A stretch of DNA of 63,240 nucleotides, filler included, from Octopus bimaculoides (GCF_001194135.2; 7 parts of 7 records of this genome joined end to end with filler, not necessarily neighbours in it), one strand, 5' to 3'; counted from the whole stretch's first letter, positions 28,905-36,157 are shown. Numbers and translations: made by a program. Notes: a model not told the origin generated them from the sequence alone.

Positions 28905-29285
28905 NNNNNNNNNNNNNNNNNNNNNNNNNNNNNNNNNNNNNNNNNNNNAGAAGGAGGGGAGGGGAGAGAAGGAGGGGAGGGGAGAGAGCGGGGGGAGAGA
29001 GCGGGGGGAGAGGGAGAGAGAGAGGGGAGGGAGAATAGGAGAGAAAGGTGTGAAAGAGGGAGGGAGAATAGGAGAGGGAGAATAGGAGAGGGAGAGAAAG
29101 AGGGAGAGAGAGTGGGAAAGAGAGAATGAGTGAAAGAGGGAAAGAAAGAAGGGTAGAGAGAGAGGGGAAGGTAATGTGTGTATGGGTGGGTGGTTACGCC
29201 GGCGAAACAGAAAGAGAGAGAGAGAGAGATGATGCAGTGAGGTGGAGGAAGAGAGTGAAATAGAGAGGGAGAAGGCTAGAGCATA

Positions 29286-29323
<38 letters not shown>

Positions 29324-29414
29324 TTTACGCGCGCGCGCGAGAGAGATAGAGTGAGTGAGTGAGAGAGTGAAGGGCAGTGATGAAGAAATTAGAGGAGAAT
29401 GAGGCTTGAAAACG

Positions 29415-29570
29415 GTAAATTTAGCAGCAGCAGCAACAACTACAACAGTAGCAGCAGCAGTAGCAATAGTAGTAGTAGCAGTAGCGGCAGTCGTGGTGGT
29501 GTTGGTGGTTGTAGTAGTAGTAGTAGTGGTGGTGGTAGTCGTAGAGGGAGTAGTAGGGATGAAGGTGGGC
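29415..29570. repeat. (GCA/GTA/GGT) trinucleotide complex microsatellite
   Basis: Direct inspection. Confidence 0.8.
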
Positions 29571-30967
29571 CCTCGGCCTTATGTGTGACGACAGTGATGA
29601 CGGTGGCAGCGAGGGCAATAGTCATGGCTATTTCTAGCAAGTTGAGGGACCAGAGATTTGCTGTCATTTAAGCCTCGCACTAACCCCGGATGTATTTTCC
29701 TATACACGATTAAAGGTGCTCTTGCCATGACCATCTCTTGTTAATCGAACACTGCATCTAAAATTACATGCCTCACTGTGTCTGCCCTATATTAGCACTG
29801 TAGATGGGTAGTTGAGGGAGAACTGGCTACTGTTTCTAACAGAGTAAGTGGTAAACAAACATAAGCTACTATGTTTGGTGATGGTAATGAAAGTGGGTGG
29901 TGGTGGTGTTGGCGGCGGCGGTGGTGGTGGCTGTGGTGCCGTTGTTGGTATGGTGATGATGTTGATGATGGTGACGATATGAGTTTACATGTGTGTATGT
30001 GTATGTATGGATGCGTACGCGTATGTGTGTGTGTGTGTGTGTATGTGTGTGTATGTGTGTGACTGTGTGTGTGTGCGCGCGCGTATGTATGTGTTCTACT
30101 AAAATATTTGCTCGACATGTTAAATGTAATTTTGTCTCGTTCTTTTGCAGCCATTTTTAGAAAAAGATGATGATGATGAAAAAGAAGAGTAACAACGACA
30201 GTAATGAAAACAACAAAACATCATCATCATCACCCCCCCACCCCAAGAGTAAATATCGAAATATCATAATGACTAATCAGGTAACATTACGGATCAGCCC
30301 TCGTACCCACCTCCTCTACTACCACCATCATACATCTTGGAAATCATTTCTGACCCCGTGGAAAAAATAAACAAAAGCAAAAGAAGAAAAAAACAAGGAG
30401 TCACATAAAACTGTGTAAAGCTTCATCTCTGAGGAGGAATGAAGGATCTCTTATCGTGTGTTCGACTGAGATTAGCGTCATGGGACTCCATCCAGCTACG
30501 AAAAGAAACCTCCGACCAAACAGACGCAGGAAAGGAAGGCTCATTATAAATTCAAAATGGCTTCTTCGTTTGTGTGTTTGTCTCCGGACTAAATAGCTTT
30601 ATCGTACCGCTTAGCCTGCCATCGACGTTTCTATGTCCTCAGTTAATTATTCTGGCCAAATACAACATATTCAAGATGAGCAATTGATTGCAAGATAATG
30701 GCAACACTGTTTACCGGTCGTTGTTCTTCCAATTTTCCCGACATCGCTTTCGTTCTTTCCTTCTTTCTTTCCTTCTTTCTTCCGTTATTTGTATGCTTGC
30801 ACTTTTCTCTTTCTTCTTTCTCTTTATTCATTTCGCTAACTTCTGTCGTGCGAACGATAATCGGAAGACGATTATGATAGCAATTATAACAATAATAATA
30901 ACAATTCTTCTTCTTCTTCTTCGTATCGTCATCATCATCGTTGTTGTTGTTGTTGTTATTTTTATTT

Positions 30968-31165
30968 AAGTGGCGAGCTGGGAAAAATGCTTGCGCTCTG
31001 AGTTCGAATTCCGCCGAGGTCGACTTTGCCTTTTATCATTTCGGGGTCGATGAAATTGACTAACCCCTCCCGTAAATTGTAGGCCTTGTGCCTATAGCAC
31101 GAAGGATTCTTCTTATTATTATTAGGCGGTGAGCTGGCAGAATTGTTAGGACGCCGGGCAAAATA
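30968..31165 (+). mobile_element. SINE family C copy (internally deleted) followed by the head of a second copy
   Basis: GGCGAGCTGG...GAGTTCGAATTCCGCCGAGGTCGACTTTGCC...GGCCTTGTGCC...(TTA) then GGCGGTGAGCTGGCAGAATTGTTAG. Confidence 0.75.
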
Positions 31166-31168
31166 GGC

Positions 31169-31211
<43 letters not shown>

Positions 31212-32247
31212 TAGACAAACAGACAGATTGATTGATAGATAGACAGATGGATAGACCCATCGATCGATCGATAGATAGACAGACAGACAGACAGATCGAT
31301 TGATCGATAGATCGATAGATAGATAGATAGAAACCTAAACACGATTTATAATTTTGTGTGGTATCTATGTGGCCAGCTCCATGTTGTACGTATTTGTGAG
31401 TATGAGTATATATATATAAATATGTGTATGTGTATGTGTGTGTGTGTACGTGAGTGTGTGCGTGTGTGTGTGTGTGTGTGTTTGAGTGAGTGTGTGCTTG
31501 AGTATTGTAACTGTGTATATGTTTGCGTTGCCGACACGTGCTTACATATGTATCTGGACGTATTTTTTATACGGAGGCCAATAAATGGAACAATCATTAT
31601 TATTACGACCTTTTACAAATGACGCTGATGGTGGTGGTGGTCTTGGTGGGCGTGGTGGTGGTCGTGGTGGTGGCGTTACAGATTGTAATTGTTGTGGTTG
31701 TTGTTATCTACGGAGTTTGAAACTTATTTCTGATCAATTTGGTTCTCAGCCAGTTGTTGTTTCGGCTCTTACAAACACATTCTTCCTCGTATATATATCT
31801 CTTACTATAACATCAACATCAACACCACAACTACATCTTGCTTCTACCACTACACTATGCACCACCGCCACTACAACCAACACAGTATCTACCTTCACCA
31901 TCACCACCACCATTATTACAAGGACACAAAAGCTACCGCGGCCGACGCCATCATCACCACTACGTATTTAATTTCACCTCTCACCATCACCACATACCGC
32001 GATATTGGCTGAGATTATAAAAATAATAACTTTACTCCAACTTACGACCTTTGGATGGCTGCCATATTGTAACATATGTGTGTGTGTGTCTTTATACATG
32101 TGCGTGTGTGTTTGTGCGCATGTATGTGTGTGCATGTGTTTGTATAACAAGGCGTATGTATGTATATGTATACACGTGTGTGTATGTATACGGGTGTGCG
32201 TATCTGTCTATGCATGTGTGTCTGTGTTTATGTACATGCATCTGTAG

Positions 32248-32291
<44 letters not shown>

Positions 32292-32534
32292 ATAAAAACA
32301 TACAGAGTGTGGTGGATAAATTGTCATTTTATATTTTTAATTTCGCGCATGCACATCGTTTTTTATTTTATCGACTACACAGTATAGAGGGTCAGTTGGG
32401 CACCGTCAGTGAGAAAAACAGCACCATAACGCAATTCACTCTGCCAGAAATAAGGAAACGACATACTGTACTGCTTGACATTCGCGCCAGAAGCTCCAGT
32501 ACGATAGATAGATAGATATAGATAGATAGATAGA

Positions 32535-32690
32535 TAACTTTATTAGCCACACAGGGCCGAACACAGAAGGGACAAAATACAATGTAGAGCTTTTCTTTTC
32601 GAAAGAAAAATGAAGAAAATAGAGAAAAGGAGAAAAAGTTCCGATCAAAAGGGATCGTGTAAAAAAAAAAAAAGGGCGTAAATATACATA
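32535..32690 (-). mobile_element. LINE-type 3' tail fragment, same family as 19958-20150
   Basis: CTTTATTAGCCACACAGGGCCGAACACAGAAGGGACAAAATACAATGTAGAGCTTTTCTTTTCGA. Confidence 0.6.
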
Positions 32691-32759
32691 CGCACGCACA
32701 CACATTGTATGTGTTTATATACGTATGTCTTCATGTATGTGAATATGCATACAGATAAT

Positions 32760-32797
<38 letters not shown>

Positions 32798-33163
32798 CAA
32801 ATGTGTGCATATCTATATTCTTTATTTGTAAACATGTATGTTTATACGCATGCATATATCTAACTATATGTGTATGCAATAATGTGTGTGTATAAATATG
32901 TATATATTCTAACAATGCATGTATGTGACTTTGTAATTAGCGATGTTCATCTGTATATTTGTATATATGTGTCTATATATAACTAACTACTCATGTAAGT
33001 AGTTATGTCCATAAGTATCCCCAAAAGATTAGAAATGTTATCGTATCACAACGTTGAACGAAATGATTCTCAGGTCCCCAGTTAATACACGACGCCATTT
33101 ACTTCAAATGGCAGCCGACAGCATCTACATATCTCTCCCCCTCACTCCCTTTCTCTTTCATTA

Positions 33164-33202
<39 letters not shown>

Positions 33203-33662
33203 GTTGAGGTAGTTAGAGGAAGGGGAATGTTGTTAATAGTTGATAGAGAGAGAGAGAGAGGAAGGAGTTGCTGGATGCAGATAGAAAGAGAGGAAATAAG
33301 AAGAGAGAAAGAGTGAGGCTGGAGGTTGTTGCAGGTAAATATAGGAGGAGAAGAGAGAGGTGTCGGTGGAGGATTGAAGATATTTGCCTCAAATGGAGGA
33401 CAGAAAGGAAATGCAGTGTTCTTAACTGCACTTACGTATGTGTATTTGTATAGATGTGTGTGTGTGTGTCTATGTACGTATGTAATGAGTGATTCAAAAG
33501 TCGCCATACATTTATTTTTTTGTAAGAAACAGTTTATAAAAACAGTTTATTTTTTATTTAACAGTTTTATTTAGCAGTTCCCATTGTTCCGAATACACAT
33601 TGCAATACGTTTACCCCACTCATTGTGAACTCGTAATAGCACATCTGGTGATACCAGTTGTT

Positions 33663-33854
33663 GTTGATACATGGAGACTTTTGAATCACCCTATATATAT
33701 ATATATNNNNNNNNNNNNNNNNNNNNNNNNNNNNNNNNNNNNNNNNNNNNNNNNNNNNNNNNNNNNNNNNNNNNNNNNNNNNNNNNNNNNNNNNNNNNNN
33801 NNNNNNNNNNNNNTACACACACACAGGGTTATTCAAAAGTCTCCATGTATCAAC
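33663..33854. mobile_element. Tc1/mariner-like terminal sequences in inverted orientation around (TA)/(CA) and a gap
   Basis: GTTGATACATGGAGACTTTTGAATCACCCT ... AGGGTTATTCAAAAGTCTCCATGTATCAAC (about 30 bp, 1 mismatch). Confidence 0.65.
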
Positions 33855-33944
33855 ATAGGATTCCCTCACGCAAGAAAGAACAGCTAAGTTCCAAACCACT
33901 ATTAGGGATAACATTTTGAAAGGAATGAAAAATAAAAACATTTA

Positions 33945-34040
33945 CCATCTACTTTCCTTGACCAATGGTTTCTGATTTTATTTTAGCAAATAAAATAATT
34001 TGCTAGGTGAAATTTTCATCAGCAGGTACATCAAGATTAA
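33945..34040 (-). ncRNA. Degenerate type I hammerhead ribozyme
   Basis: CTG-CTGATGA (34022-34016), 8-bp hairpin TAGCAAAT/ATTTGCTA in stem II, GAAA (33972-33969), stem III ACC-ATT-GGT, GUC triplet; basal stem II and the first stem I pair are mismatched. Confidence 0.55.
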
Positions 34041-34061
34041 ACATATATACACTTCGTGTCT

Positions 34062-34232
34062 ATGTTCTGAGTTGAAATTCCAGAGGTCAACTTTGCCTTT
34101 CATCCTTTCTAGGTCGATAAATTTAGTACCAGTTGCGTACTGGGTCAATCTAATCGACTGCCCCACCTCACTCCCCAAACTACTGTTAAGCATTTCGCCC
34201 GGCGTGCTAATGATTCTGCCAGCTGGCCGTCT
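34062..34232 (+). mobile_element. SINE family C body (+) joined to an inverted SINE head (-)
   Basis: GTTCTGAGTTGAAATTCC.AGAGGTCAACTTTGCCTTTCATCC... then TAAGCATTTCGCCCGGCGTGCTAATGATTCTGCCAGCTGGCC. Confidence 0.75.
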
Positions 34233-34429
34233 TAAAGTCATTAAATAATGTCACAGAAAGAGAACTACGTATTTTTTTCTTTCCATGTTGTATTAACAAG
34301 GTACTTTTAAAAGATCTACCTAACCGTCATTGTTTTTACCTCGAGCTCTTAACAAATACACAAGTAACCGATATTATCACGAGCAATGCTTCTTTCCTTA
34401 CAGTCATCTTTATATTTCTCAACTGCTTC

Positions 34430-35194
34430 ACGAACAAAATTCGCTCTTTTGAGACAAAGCATCCGAAGGTGGCGATGTGTTCTATGAAAGGAGATGTTGT
34501 TAAAAATTTATTTGTATTTCGATCTATTAAACGTTTCTTTTATTTCACTATTGTGTTACCTTCTTTTACTCAATTCTTTCTTGCATATATACCTATATAT
34601 TTCAAGGAAGCAATCCATTATTTATTCCAGGCATAAAACAAGGGTTCATGCACAAGCAGTCGATAAATCTATTCAATCAAATACTGCCCTTAATCCCAGG
34701 AAAAAAAAAACAGAGAATAGATTCAAAGCATTTAAAACCGATTATTTAAGTCGATTATTTGAAATCCTTTAGAGAGAGAAAAAATTCCCTTTTCTTCACT
34801 GCAACAAATATACAAATCTAAATATTTACCTCGGTAATTCAATAATTGGAGAAATACATAATCATTGTGTAACCACCAAGAAAACCCTGAACAAGATGAA
34901 ACATCAAATTTATTTTCTTCCATCATTTTTTTCCCAACAAATATTTTCTATTTTATGTACCAAACGCTGACAGATCTTATACCAATGTAATACAATATCC
35001 AGAAGAAAATAGTTGGTTTCTAAACATGATAGCAATTTATATACTTTTCCTTTCAATTCTATGTATCTATTTTCTGAATCTAAACATGGAAGTTCACCAG
35101 TAAACATGGCGCCCCCCCTTTTTTTAATGCTTTGCTTCCATTTTGTAACTGCAAAGTCGCCATCTTGATAAATGTAGAATTGATAATTTGACAT
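34430..35194 (-). pseudogene. Heavily decayed Penelope-like RT plus GIY-YIG remnant
   Basis: FYIYQDGDFAV (resembles F.RY.DD.F), MFTGELPCLD...KVYK (resembles FT.E..LPFLD...VY.K); downstream LKYIG, KKELSKRR*H.SEIK and SPFIEHI across several frames. Confidence 0.55.
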
Positions 35195-35330
35195 GAAAAT
35201 CCGACTCGTTGATGGATAAGAAGGAAATATTTTTGTCGCTCACTTTCACGTCTCATTTCAATTATTAATCAATTGTCAATATTAAAGAGTAATATTCTTA
35301 CAACATTACTCAGTCTACATTTACAAATAC

Positions 35331-35369
<39 letters not shown>

Positions 35370-35691
35370 AGAGAGAGAGAGAGAGAGAGAAAGAGCGCGT
35401 ATGTAGCAAATCATCTGTGAGCGGTTAACTTCCTTTACGGAATCTCAATGATGGACAACTTCAAAACCTTGTGAATATACGATTCATATATTATCATTAG
35501 TGAAATGAATAATAACAATAATAATATAAGTGGCCAGTAAGGAAAATCTGATAAATGACAAATCCAAAATTTTATAGTTAATTTATAATTATAACAGGAC
35601 GCACGAGGTACAATACGGTTAGACAGCAATTTAATTAACACTACAAATGTTTCGATACAACATAGATTCACTTATACACAGGGTTATATAT

Positions 35692-36123
35692 CAAGTACAA
35701 TAGAAATCGGGCTACGAGCAAAGAAATTAACTTTCTAACTCGGCAGGAAGCCGGAGAATGAGGAAATAGATATGATATCTCTGGATCACTTGATTTCGAA
35801 TTTTGAGAGCTTACCTCCCTTAATTCTCATCAGCAGGTTTCACTATATATCTAGGATTAAAAACATTGCTAATTTCGCTCTGCTTTGTAACCGTTGAAAG
35901 GCTAGCACCAAATTCAAAAACGCTGTCGGTGTATAAAATTATTAAAAGAATAAATAATCGAAAATATTTAAATAGATATTATTATTATTATTAATTATTA
36001 TTATTACCAGTAAAATGAATAACAACAATTATATAGGTAGCCAACAAGCAAAAGGCGATAAATGACAAATCCAAAATTTGGTAAGTTGATTCTTTGCTCA
36101 TAGCCCGATTTTCGTTGTGCTTG
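35692..36123 (-). mobile_element. Inverted-repeat-bounded non-autonomous module containing a hammerhead ribozyme
   Basis: ~41-bp imperfect inverted repeats (35692-35733 / 36083-36123, core AAATCGGGCTAYGAGCAAAGAA), TA-rich flanks; ~80-bp direct duplication 35495-35575 / 36000-36080. Confidence 0.65.
35767..35853 (-). ncRNA. Complete extended type I hammerhead ribozyme
   Basis: TAGATAT atagtgaaac CTG | CTGATGA | GAATT aa GGGAG gtaag CTCTC aa AATTC | GAAA TC aagt GAT C | CAG agatatc ATATCTA: all core nucleotides are canonical and stems I, II and III pair; predicted cleavage after AUC, between 35784 and 35783. Confidence 0.85.

Positions 36124-36157
<34 letters not shown>

What the first reader, a model, noticed from the sequence alone, without database searches (positions are those of the whole stretch)
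35767..35853. Intact, extended type I hammerhead ribozyme preserved beside a decayed retroelement
Seen: canonical CUGAUGA/GAAA/UH core with G10.1-C11.1; stem II of 5 bp + 2x2 A loop + 5 bp; stem III of 3 bp with a 4-nt loop; stem I of 3 bp + internal loop + 7 bp (TAGATAT/ATATCTA). Known: a stem I internal loop allows the tertiary contact of fast natural type I HHRs, whereas PLE HHRs are usually minimal. Inference: full integrity next to an ORF riddled with stops, and next to a decayed sister HHR, suggests a recently active non-autonomous RNA or purifying selection (exaptation, e.g. an intronic self-cleaving element in a host transcript).
Basis: partly seen in the sequence, partly recalled or inferred. 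Interest (0 to 1): 0.85.

Follow-up and report, generated by a model that had tools for sequence, protein, structure and literature searches.

The report
Hammerhead ribozyme relic in repeat DNA
The sequence does contain a well-formed hammerhead self-cleaving RNA motif, but it looks like an ordinary leftover copy of a ribozyme-carrying mobile element of a kind already known across invertebrate genomes, not a ribozyme recruited by the host.

Summary
The motif is real. On the minus strand, 35836-35781 holds a type I hammerhead with every core position canonical. Helix II is 5 bp + AA/AA + 5 bp, helix III is 3 bp with a 4-nt loop, helix I is 3 bp, and the cut falls after C17, between 35784 and 35783. 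A motif this complete is expected below 2.3e-10 per base.

- The distal 7-bp "extension" of helix I is at chance level (18-27% of controls).
- No Rfam hammerhead model matches, even at E<=10.
- Nearest-neighbour folding prefers a competing fold (-17.7 against -10.4 kcal/mol).

The "decayed sister" exists at 34029-33953, same strand, 1811 nt away. It shares ACCUGCUGAUGA.AAUU and keeps helix III through a compensatory U-A to C-G change. It has lost G10.1-C11.1 and the 1.1-2.1 pair.

No reverse transcriptase, GIY-YIG or other retroelement ORF is detectable anywhere in the 7.2-kb piece. The hammerhead sits between an 84-nt direct repeat and a 49-nt inverted repeat next to (TA)n.

Best reading: an old, non-autonomous copy from the Penelope-like element (PLE) / retrozyme lineage. 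The evidence does not support exaptation, but it could not be tested because no other copy or ortholog was reachable.

The parts
35781..35836 (-). Statistically solid hammerhead motif (56 nt): helix I 3 bp, core, helix II, GAA, helix III, C17
   Evidence: Read directly. Found by my own descriptor. Coordinates per position. Chance rate below 2.3e-10 per base.
35767..35853 (-).
   Evidence: The helix is present, but a helix of >=7 bp occurs in 18% of shuffled flanks and 27% of comparable window pairs in the piece.
35827..35833 (-). C3 U4 G5 A6 U7 G8 A9 (CUGAUGA box)
35798..35826 (-). Helix II: G10.1-C11.1 + 4 bp, AA/AA internal loop, 5 bp (one G-U), loop GUAAG
   Evidence: Pair probabilities 0.92-0.999 in the ensemble.
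35784..35797 (-). G12 A13 A14 (35797-35795), helix III AUC/GAU with loop AAGU (35794-35785), C17 (35784). Predicted scissile bond between 35784 and 35783.
   Evidence: Helix III pair probability is only 0.001 in the nearest-neighbour ensemble.
33953..34029 (-). Decayed sister hammerhead. CUGAUGA at 34022-34016. Long helix II region 34015-33973 with an 8-bp distal hairpin UAGCAAAU/AUUUGCUA. GAA at 33972-33970. Helix III ACC/GGU at 33969-33961. C17 at 33960.
   Evidence: Defects: 10.1 = A, 11.1 = A, 11.2 = C, and A1.1 opposite G2.1. A relaxed descriptor is expected 0.067 times per piece and is seen twice. The 5-nt 5' flank ACCUG is identical in both copies.
36083..36130 (.). Inverted copy of 35685-35733, abutting the upstream direct repeat and running into (TA)n
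   Evidence: blastn 84% over 49 nt. Alignment. I7.
35685..35733 (.). Partner arm of the inverted repeat.
35999..36079 (.). Direct repeat copy 1 (23-nt identical core AAATTTTGGATTTGTCATTTATC on the minus strand)
   Evidence: (D10). 80% identity to copy 2, spacing 507 nt.
35489..35572 (.). Direct repeat copy 2. Similarity does not continue beyond it.
   Evidence: No significant similarity after it (46 of 300 shuffles reach the score).
36125..36157 (.). (TA)16.5 microsatellite at the edge of the piece, next to the inverted arm

Best explanation
This is one old copy of a hammerhead-bearing, non-autonomous interspersed repeat. The repeat belongs to the lineage that includes the pseudo-LTRs (pLTRs) of Penelope-like elements (PLEs) and the animal non-LTR retrozymes. 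It sits in AT-rich, microsatellite-rich non-coding DNA.

In the active ancestor, the hammerhead would have cut longer-than-unit transcripts after C17. That leaves a 5'-OH and a 2',3'-cyclic phosphate and gives unit-length RNA. Such RNA can be circularised and is copied into DNA by a PLE reverse transcriptase supplied in trans.

At this locus only one motif keeps its core, so a transcript through it could at most be cut once, between 35784 and 35783. With 3-bp helices I and III and a stable competing fold, cleavage as a lone monomer is likely to be slow or to need a partner copy or a protein.

Shown here:
- the motif and its non-random nature;
- a second, decayed family member 1.8 kb away;
- direct and inverted repeats next to (TA)n.

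Inferred:
- the family assignment;
- the processing role;
- activity.
For: - Canonical core and three helices, far beyond chance.
- A second motif lies on the same strand 1811 nt away with the same ACCUGCUGAUGA.AAUU start. It has a different but still hairpin-forming distal helix II, and helix III is kept by a two-sided change (U15.2-A16.2 to C-G). Finding two relaxed motifs when 0.067 is expected gives a Poisson P of about 0.002. Variation that preserves structure is what PMC4209133 reports for PLE hammerhead families.
- A helix III of 2-3 bp plus a tetraloop and low GC (0.25-0.38 here) match invertebrate retrozymes (PMC7229834).
- The local layout is an 84-nt direct repeat at 507-nt spacing, an inverted copy of a 49-nt segment next to the upstream repeat, and a (TA)n flank. 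PLE insertions are described with partial tandems, an inverted 5'-truncated copy upstream, and AT-rich or microsatellite targets (PMC8557442; PMC11167929).
- PLEs are abundant in coleoid genomes, with an expansion at JC distance 0.2 in Octopus vulgaris (PMC13282606; PMC8967140).
- Dispersed monomer copies of retrozymes are common, and retrozymes are argued to derive from PLE pLTRs (bioRxiv 10.64898/2026.07.22.740005).
Against: - No reverse transcriptase, GIY-YIG or other retroelement domain is found in any frame of the piece. The link to PLEs therefore rests on motif type and layout only.
- No tandem array of hammerhead units is present. The direct repeat does not extend past 84 nt.
- It does not fit the PLE minimal hammerhead in two respects: there is no unpaired base between A9 and 10.1, and there is a real 3-bp helix III.
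- No Rfam hammerhead model matches.
- Plain sequence similarity between the two motifs is not significant on its own (26 of 300 shuffles).
- The organism was not verified.
- No other copy of the family could be fetched.
Confidence: 0.62

Rival explanations
1. Exapted host ribozyme. The hammerhead is kept by purifying selection, for example as a self-cleaving element in an intron or UTR of a host transcript, as in the conserved amniote intronic hammerheads.
For: The core is fully canonical while the neighbouring sister has decayed. About 44% of retrozyme-derived copies in Xenopus lie in introns, so genic locations are common.
Against: - No coding or gene evidence is found in the piece.
- No match to the Rfam models of exapted hammerheads or to any other.
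- Helix I has probably lost a pair relative to the sister.
- An intact 13-position core is expected in 5-25% of neutrally decaying copies at 10-20% divergence (my calculation; local repeats are 80-84% identical).
- Scanning for intact motifs biases the sample towards intact copies.
Confidence: 0.07
2. The hammerhead-like motif rides inside a small DNA transposon of about 446 bp (36130-35685). This would be a MITE (miniature inverted-repeat element) with 45-49-nt terminal inverted repeats and TA target duplications, and the motif would have no role in its spread.
For: The inverted arms 36130-36083 and 35733-35685 are 84% complementary. Both are flanked on the outside by TA repeats: TATATA|ACAAGC...GTACTTGA|TATATA. 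The 446-nt stretch folds far better than shuffles because the ends pair (z = -5.4). Tc1/mariner elements and MITEs are annotated in O. vulgaris.
Against: The sister motif has none of these arms or the direct repeat around it, so the hammerhead module occurs independently of them. The same geometry arises from an inverted 5'-truncated PLE copy. The ends do not resemble usual Tc1/mariner termini (from memory, not tested).
Confidence: 0.12
3. Chance resemblance in AT-rich DNA, with no ribozyme ancestry.
For: The two-box pattern alone occurs in 14% of shuffles. No Rfam hit. The hammerhead fold is not the predicted MFE. A loose descriptor would give about 110 chance hits in a 2.7-Gb genome.
Against: The motif as observed occurred 0 times in 400,000 conditional trials, i.e. 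below 2.3e-10 per base. A second related motif with an identical 5' flank lies 1.8 kb away.
Confidence: 0.02
4. The ancestry is as in the best explanation, but this copy is catalytically dead as a lone RNA. It would not cut itself at physiological Mg2+ without a second copy (dimer) or a protein partner.
For: - Helices I and III have only 3 bp each.
- A competing pairing of G2.1-U7 with the helix III strand is 7.3 kcal/mol more stable in the nearest-neighbour model.
- PLE hammerheads show low activity in vitro, and the Anolis PLE hammerhead cleaves only with its protein.
- A probable G1.4 to A change weakens helix I.
Against: Invertebrate retrozyme hammerheads with a 2-bp helix III plus a tetraloop, and without the canonical loop contacts, do self-cleave. 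The mussel example has kobs of about 0.1 per min. Nearest-neighbour models do not score the hammerhead junction or tertiary contacts.
Confidence: 0.4

Closest known systems
Hammerheads in the pseudo-LTRs of Penelope-like elements (min-HHRs; Cervera and de la Pena 2014, PMC4209133)
   Same: [quoted passage not shown]
   Different: This copy has a real helix III (3 bp + 4-nt loop) and no unpaired base between A9 and 10.1. No RT/GIY-YIG ORF is detectable next to it.
Animal non-LTR retrozymes (Cervera and de la Pena 2020, PMC7229834; Li et al. 2026 preprint 10.64898/2026.07.22.740005)
   Same: Type I hammerhead, low GC, helix III of 2-3 bp with a tetraloop as in invertebrates. Mollusc (mussel) examples lack the canonical loop 1-loop 2 contacts. 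Dispersed monomer derivatives exist. Unit sizes of 51-972 bp include the 507-nt spacing seen here.
   Different: No tandem array with one hammerhead per unit. There is only an 84-nt direct repeat and a diverged second motif 1.8 kb away. Canonical retrozyme hammerheads have helix I of 6 bp and helix II of 4 bp. Here they are 3 bp and 5+5 bp.
Conserved intronic hammerheads of amniotes (Rfam HH9/HH10; cited in PMC7229834 as playing a role in mRNA biogenesis)
   Same: Isolated type I motif that is not in a tandem array.
   Different: No Rfam match. No gene context is visible, and conservation could not be tested.

Membership tests
Hammerhead ribozyme, type I | Conserved core: C3 U4 G5 A6 N7 G8 A9, G12 A13 A14, A15.1-U16.1, H17 (not G) | tested here: met
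   All positions are canonical, and the cleavage triplet is AUC.
Hammerhead ribozyme, type I | Three helices around the core, with helices II and III closed by loops and helix I open | tested here: met
   Helix I 3 bp, helix II 5+5 bp, helix III 3 bp. Beyond chance.
Hammerhead ribozyme, type I | Match to a curated covariance model (Rfam Hammerhead_1, _3, _II, HH9, HH10) | tested here: not met
   No hammerhead family is listed at E<=10, either on the 7.2-kb piece or on a 221-nt stretch with lax filters.
Hammerhead ribozyme, type I | Helix I - helix II tertiary contact (loop 1 / loop 2) needed for fast cleavage at low Mg2+ | tested here: inconclusive
   Internal loops exist in both helices. However, the distal helix that would define the helix I loop is at chance level, and the loop lies 3 bp from the core against about 6 bp in canonical animal motifs.
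Hammerhead ribozyme, type I | The hammerhead fold is thermodynamically accessible | tested here: inconclusive
   Hammerhead fold -10.4 against MFE -17.7 kcal/mol. Helix III pair probability is 0.001. Nearest-neighbour models do not score the junction.
Hammerhead ribozyme, type I | Site-specific self-cleavage giving 2',3'-cyclic phosphate and 5'-OH ends | not testable with these tools
   Needs an in vitro transcription and cleavage assay.
PLE pseudo-LTR hammerhead | Lies in a repeat flanking an ORF with reverse transcriptase and GIY-YIG endonuclease | tested here: not met
   No such domain in six frames of 28949-36157. The piece ends 304 nt upstream of the motif, so the upstream side is unknown.
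PLE pseudo-LTR hammerhead | Minimal architecture: helix III absent or 1-2 bp and palindromic, with an unpaired base between A9 and 10.1 | tested here: not met
   Helix III is 3 bp with a 4-nt loop, and A9 is followed directly by G10.1 (definition).
PLE pseudo-LTR hammerhead | Long helix II, short helix I, G10.1-C11.1 | tested here: met
   against.
PLE pseudo-LTR hammerhead | Insertion layout: partial tandem, inverted 5'-truncated copy upstream, AT-rich or microsatellite target | tested here: inconclusive
   An 84-nt direct repeat, a 49-nt inverted copy and a (TA)n flank are present. They are short and 80-84% identical, and a TIR element explains them equally well.
Animal non-LTR retrozyme | Short head-to-tail tandem repeats, each unit carrying a type I hammerhead | tested here: not met
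   TRF finds no such array. There is one hammerhead between two 84-nt repeats 507 nt apart, with no similarity after the second repeat. A dispersed monomer derivative remains possible.
Animal non-LTR retrozyme | Low GC (<45-50%) and strongly self-paired unit RNA | tested here: met
   GC 0.25-0.38. The 446-nt stretch has z = -5.4, though this comes from the terminal inverted repeat.
Animal non-LTR retrozyme | Expressed as linear and circular unit-length RNA | not testable with these tools
   Needs RNA-seq, northern blot or RNase R data.
Exapted host hammerhead | Conserved at the orthologous locus, inside a host transcript | not testable with these tools
   No eukaryotic genome of this lineage is reachable. 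Pattern scans of metagenome and prokaryote collections gave 0 hits.
MITE / TIR DNA transposon | Terminal inverted repeats with a flanking target duplication | tested here: inconclusive
   The arms are 84% complementary with TA repeats on both outer sides. Copy number and a precise duplication in (TA)n cannot be established.

The most novel reading that the evidence does not exclude
The motif represents a cephalopod-specific hammerhead variant with an extended, internally looped helix II and a 3-bp helix I. It would be active as a monomer. It would either be retained by selection in a host transcript or still produce circular RNAs from a family not yet described in octopods.
Probability: 0.07. 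Interest if true: 0.5.

Novelty: new member of a known kind. Interest (0 to 1): 0.15.

Why it matters
Little on its own. Type I hammerheads in retroelement-derived repeats are known in the thousands across invertebrates, including molluscs. The library search found no paper describing hammerheads in octopus specifically. A genome-wide census might therefore add a cephalopod family with an unusually long helix II, and it would test whether octopod PLEs have retrozyme-like dependants. This single locus gives no reason to expect a host function.

Tried and rejected
1. Rfam cmscan, on the whole piece and on 221 nt at E<=10, gave no hammerhead. The top hits (mir-297, mir-3149 and others) are TG/TA low-complexity artefacts.
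2. I tried to reach other copies through spurious ORFs in the protein collections. The 52-aa plus-strand frame through the hammerhead had no homologue. The 94-aa ORF at 35194-34913 had none either. An exact look-up of the 78-aa ORF at 35671-35438 found nothing on record.
3. A full HMMER search of the 94-aa ORF gave one hit, P0001 (E = 6.7e-6). It is a translated 171-nt tandem repeat in GCA_019364655.1. It has no DNA similarity to this piece and no hammerhead motif, so I rejected it as spurious.
4. Exact-pattern scans gave 0 hits in every case. I scanned metagenome contigs for the hammerhead and for the inverted-repeat core, and prokaryote genome contigs for the direct-repeat core.
5. Six-frame Pfam scans of the whole piece showed no RT and no GIY-YIG, only two noise hits well below their cut-offs. 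A GIY...YIG-like spacing that I noticed by eye in the 94-aa ORF (KVY-9 residues-YFL) has no support from any search.
6. ARAGORN found no tRNA-like gene in the SINE-like fragments.
7. I tested whether a second unit continues after direct repeat 2. It does not (46 of 300 shuffles reach the score).
8. I tested whether the sister is significant by plain local alignment. On its own it is not (26 of 300). Its support comes from the motif layout plus the identical flank.
9. MAFFT misaligns the 3' half of the two motifs by one base, so I compared pairs by coordinate instead and built no covariance model.

Full report
**Observation**

- CUG (35836-35834) pairs with CAG (35783-35781) as helix I.
- The CUGAUGA box is at 35833-35827.
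- Helix II is at 35826-35798. It has G10.1-C11.1 plus four A-U pairs, an AA/AA internal loop, GGGAG/CUCUC with one G-U, and loop GUAAG.
- G12 A13 A14 are at 35797-35795.
- Helix III is AUC/GAU with loop AAGU, at 35794-35785.
- C17 is at 35784, so the scissile bond lies between 35784 and 35783.

A descriptor I wrote (core boxes, helix I >=3, II >=4, III >=3 bp, A15.1-U16.1, H17) finds this site and no other in the piece.

**Is it more than chance?**
- The two boxes alone are not. CTGATGA N6-36 GAAA appears in 14 of 100 shuffles.
- With the helices, the loose descriptor has a rate of 2.0e-8 per base per strand under a first-order Markov model of this piece. That is 2.9e-4 expected here and about 110 in a genome of 2.7 Gb.
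- With the features actually seen (G10.1-C11.1, helix II >=5 bp, loop 3 <=8 nt), none of 400,000 conditional trials matched. That puts the rate below 2.3e-10 per base.
- The motif is therefore not a chance find.

**What does not hold up**
- The distal helix UAGAUAU/AUAUCUA, which makes the motif "extended", is at chance level. 18% of shuffled flanks and 27% of window pairs of the same geometry in this piece contain a helix of at least 7 bp. An alternative 5-bp register also exists.
- No Rfam hammerhead family matches at E<=10, even when only 221 nt are searched.
- The nearest-neighbour model prefers a fold in which G2.1-U7 pairs with the helix III strand. It scores -17.7 kcal/mol against -10.4 for the hammerhead fold. 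Helix III pairs have probability 0.001 in the ensemble, and the z-score of the 87-mer is only -1.44.
- These points do not disprove a ribozyme. Such models ignore the junction and tertiary contacts, and animal type I hammerheads typically have weak helices III. They do remove the basis for calling it a fast, tertiary-stabilised hammerhead.

**The sister**

A second CUGAUGA lies on the same strand at 34022-34016, 1811 nt downstream in the RNA sense.
- It is preceded by the same ACCUG and followed by AAAUU, where the intact copy has GAAUU.
- It has a long helix II region with a perfect 8-bp distal hairpin of unrelated sequence. Then come GAA, a helix III ACC/GGU with loop AUU, and C17 at 33960.
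- Against the intact copy, helix III differs by a two-sided change (U-A to C-G) that keeps the pair.
- Its defects are A at 10.1, A at 11.1, C at 11.2, and A1.1 opposite G2.1.
- A relaxed descriptor (core box, GAAA within 60 nt, 3-bp helix III, H17) is expected 0.067 times in the piece and is seen twice, a Poisson P of about 0.002. This is before counting the identical 5-nt flank.
- Plain local alignment alone is not significant (26 of 300 shuffles).
- I take the two as diverged members of one hammerhead-bearing family, not as the two ends of one recent insertion.
- The sister keeps a C2.4-G1.4 pair where the intact copy has C-A. The "intact" copy has therefore probably lost a fourth helix I pair.

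**Surroundings**
- There is no retroelement protein signal. Pfam scans of all six frames of 28949-36157, with stops masked, show no reverse transcriptase and no GIY-YIG.
- The largest nearby ORF (94 aa, 35194-34913, minus strand) has no homologue in the 5.8-billion-protein collection.
- Its only hit in the 1.84-billion-representative library is a translated 171-nt tandem repeat with no DNA similarity and no hammerhead.
- The piece is mostly microsatellites and SINE-like fragments.
- Around the hammerhead, in RNA sense, the order is as follows:

| Feature | Coordinates |
|---|---|
| (TA)n at the piece edge | 36157-36125 |
| Inverted copy of a segment that recurs downstream | 36130-36083 |
| Direct repeat 1 | 36079-35999 |
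| AT-rich and unique sequence | between repeat 1 and the hammerhead |
| Spacer | 33 nt |
| The segment itself, ending in TATATA | 35733-35685 |
| Spacer | 112 nt |
| Direct repeat 2 | 35572-35489 |

- The direct repeats are 80% identical and the inverted arms 84%. Nothing similar follows direct repeat 2.
- As RNA, the 446-nt stretch between the outer ends of the arms folds with z = -5.4 because its ends pair.

**Interpretation**

Type I hammerheads in animal genomes are known in three settings.
- The pseudo-LTRs of Penelope-like elements (PMC4209133).
- Short tandem non-LTR retrozymes and their dispersed monomers (PMC7229834; preprint 10.64898/2026.07.22.740005, which argues that retrozymes derive from PLE pseudo-LTRs).
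- A few conserved intronic motifs in amniotes.

Features that fit the first two:
- the long helix II and short helix I;
- the structure-preserving variation between the two copies;
- the low GC;
- the partial direct repeat, the inverted partial copy upstream and the (TA)n flank.

PLE insertions are described with exactly such partial tandems, inverted 5'-truncated copies and AT-rich or microsatellite targets. PLEs are abundant and old in coleoid genomes.

The fit is imperfect:
- no ORF;
- no tandem array;
- a real helix III, and no bulged base after A9.

The inverted arms with TA on both outer sides are also what a small TIR element would look like. I therefore file it as an old non-autonomous copy of the PLE/retrozyme lineage with moderate confidence (0.62). 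The MITE reading is a live rival (0.12).

**Selection**
- The core has about 13 essential positions. If the flanking repeat pairs date the insertion, this copy is about 10% diverged, and 0.9^13 is about 0.25. At 20% the figure is about 0.055 (my calculation).
- In a family of many copies, intact cores are therefore expected without selection. A reader who looks for intact motifs will also pick them out preferentially.
- Helix I already looks damaged.
- Exaptation is not excluded, because no ortholog or paralog outside the piece could be reached. Nothing found here supports it.

**Activity**
- The cleavage triplet AUC and all core positions are favourable.
- Invertebrate retrozyme hammerheads with 2-bp helices III, and without the canonical loop contacts, do cleave. 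The mussel example has kobs of about 0.1 per min.
- Against that, helix I has only 3 bp, a competing fold is predicted, PLE hammerheads are weak in vitro, and one PLE hammerhead needs its protein.
- I put the chance at about 0.4 that the lone RNA does not cleave at physiological Mg2+.

**Verdict**
- The retroelement ORF, the functional extension of helix I and the exaptation inference are not supported.
- This is a new member of a known kind and of low interest by itself.
- The organism was not verified with tools.

Noticed in passing
33662-33855 (N run 33707-33813): An assembly gap of 107 N is flanked by a 31-nt inverted repeat (33662-33692 against 33855-33825, 97%). The 97-nt 'arms' in the repeat finder are mostly N. 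This could be a foldback structure or an assembly artefact.
   Followed up: partly
30997-31164 and 34066-34241: Two SINE-like fragment pairs. 30997-31057 resembles 34066-34123 in direct orientation (82%). 31124-31164 resembles 34232-34192 in inverted orientation (83%). At 34241-34066 a head part and an inverted body part are joined. ARAGORN calls no tRNA. The fragment ends about 37 nt upstream of the sister hammerhead.
   Followed up: partly
31168-31331; 29286-29322; 30024-30075; 32251-32289; 35334-35395: Dense microsatellites: (CAGA)n/(GATA)n over 160 nt, several (TG)n runs, and a (TG)16(GA)14 junction. They produce the top Rfam 'miRNA' hits (mir-297, mir-3149, mir-466), which are low-complexity artefacts far below the gathering scores.
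   Followed up: yes
29447-29556, 29896-29952, 31629-31673: Imperfect trinucleotide runs (AGT/GGT/GGC) that create long low-complexity ORFs on both strands. No Pfam support for coding.
   Followed up: partly
35194-34913 (minus strand): A 94-aa ORF with a GIY...YIG-like spacing by eye (KVY, nine residues, YFL). It has no Pfam hit and no homologue. Its single HMMER hit is a tandem-repeat translation in GCA_019364655.1 (L001 4879-6305, 171-nt unit, 8.4 copies).
   Followed up: yes
35785-35794 and 33961-33969 (minus strand): Helix III plus loop is nearly palindromic in both copies (AUCAAGUGAU and ACCAUUGGU). Two copies could therefore form an extended intermolecular helix III with one or two central mismatches, as proposed for dimeric animal hammerheads. 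There is no tandem partner here.
   Followed up: no
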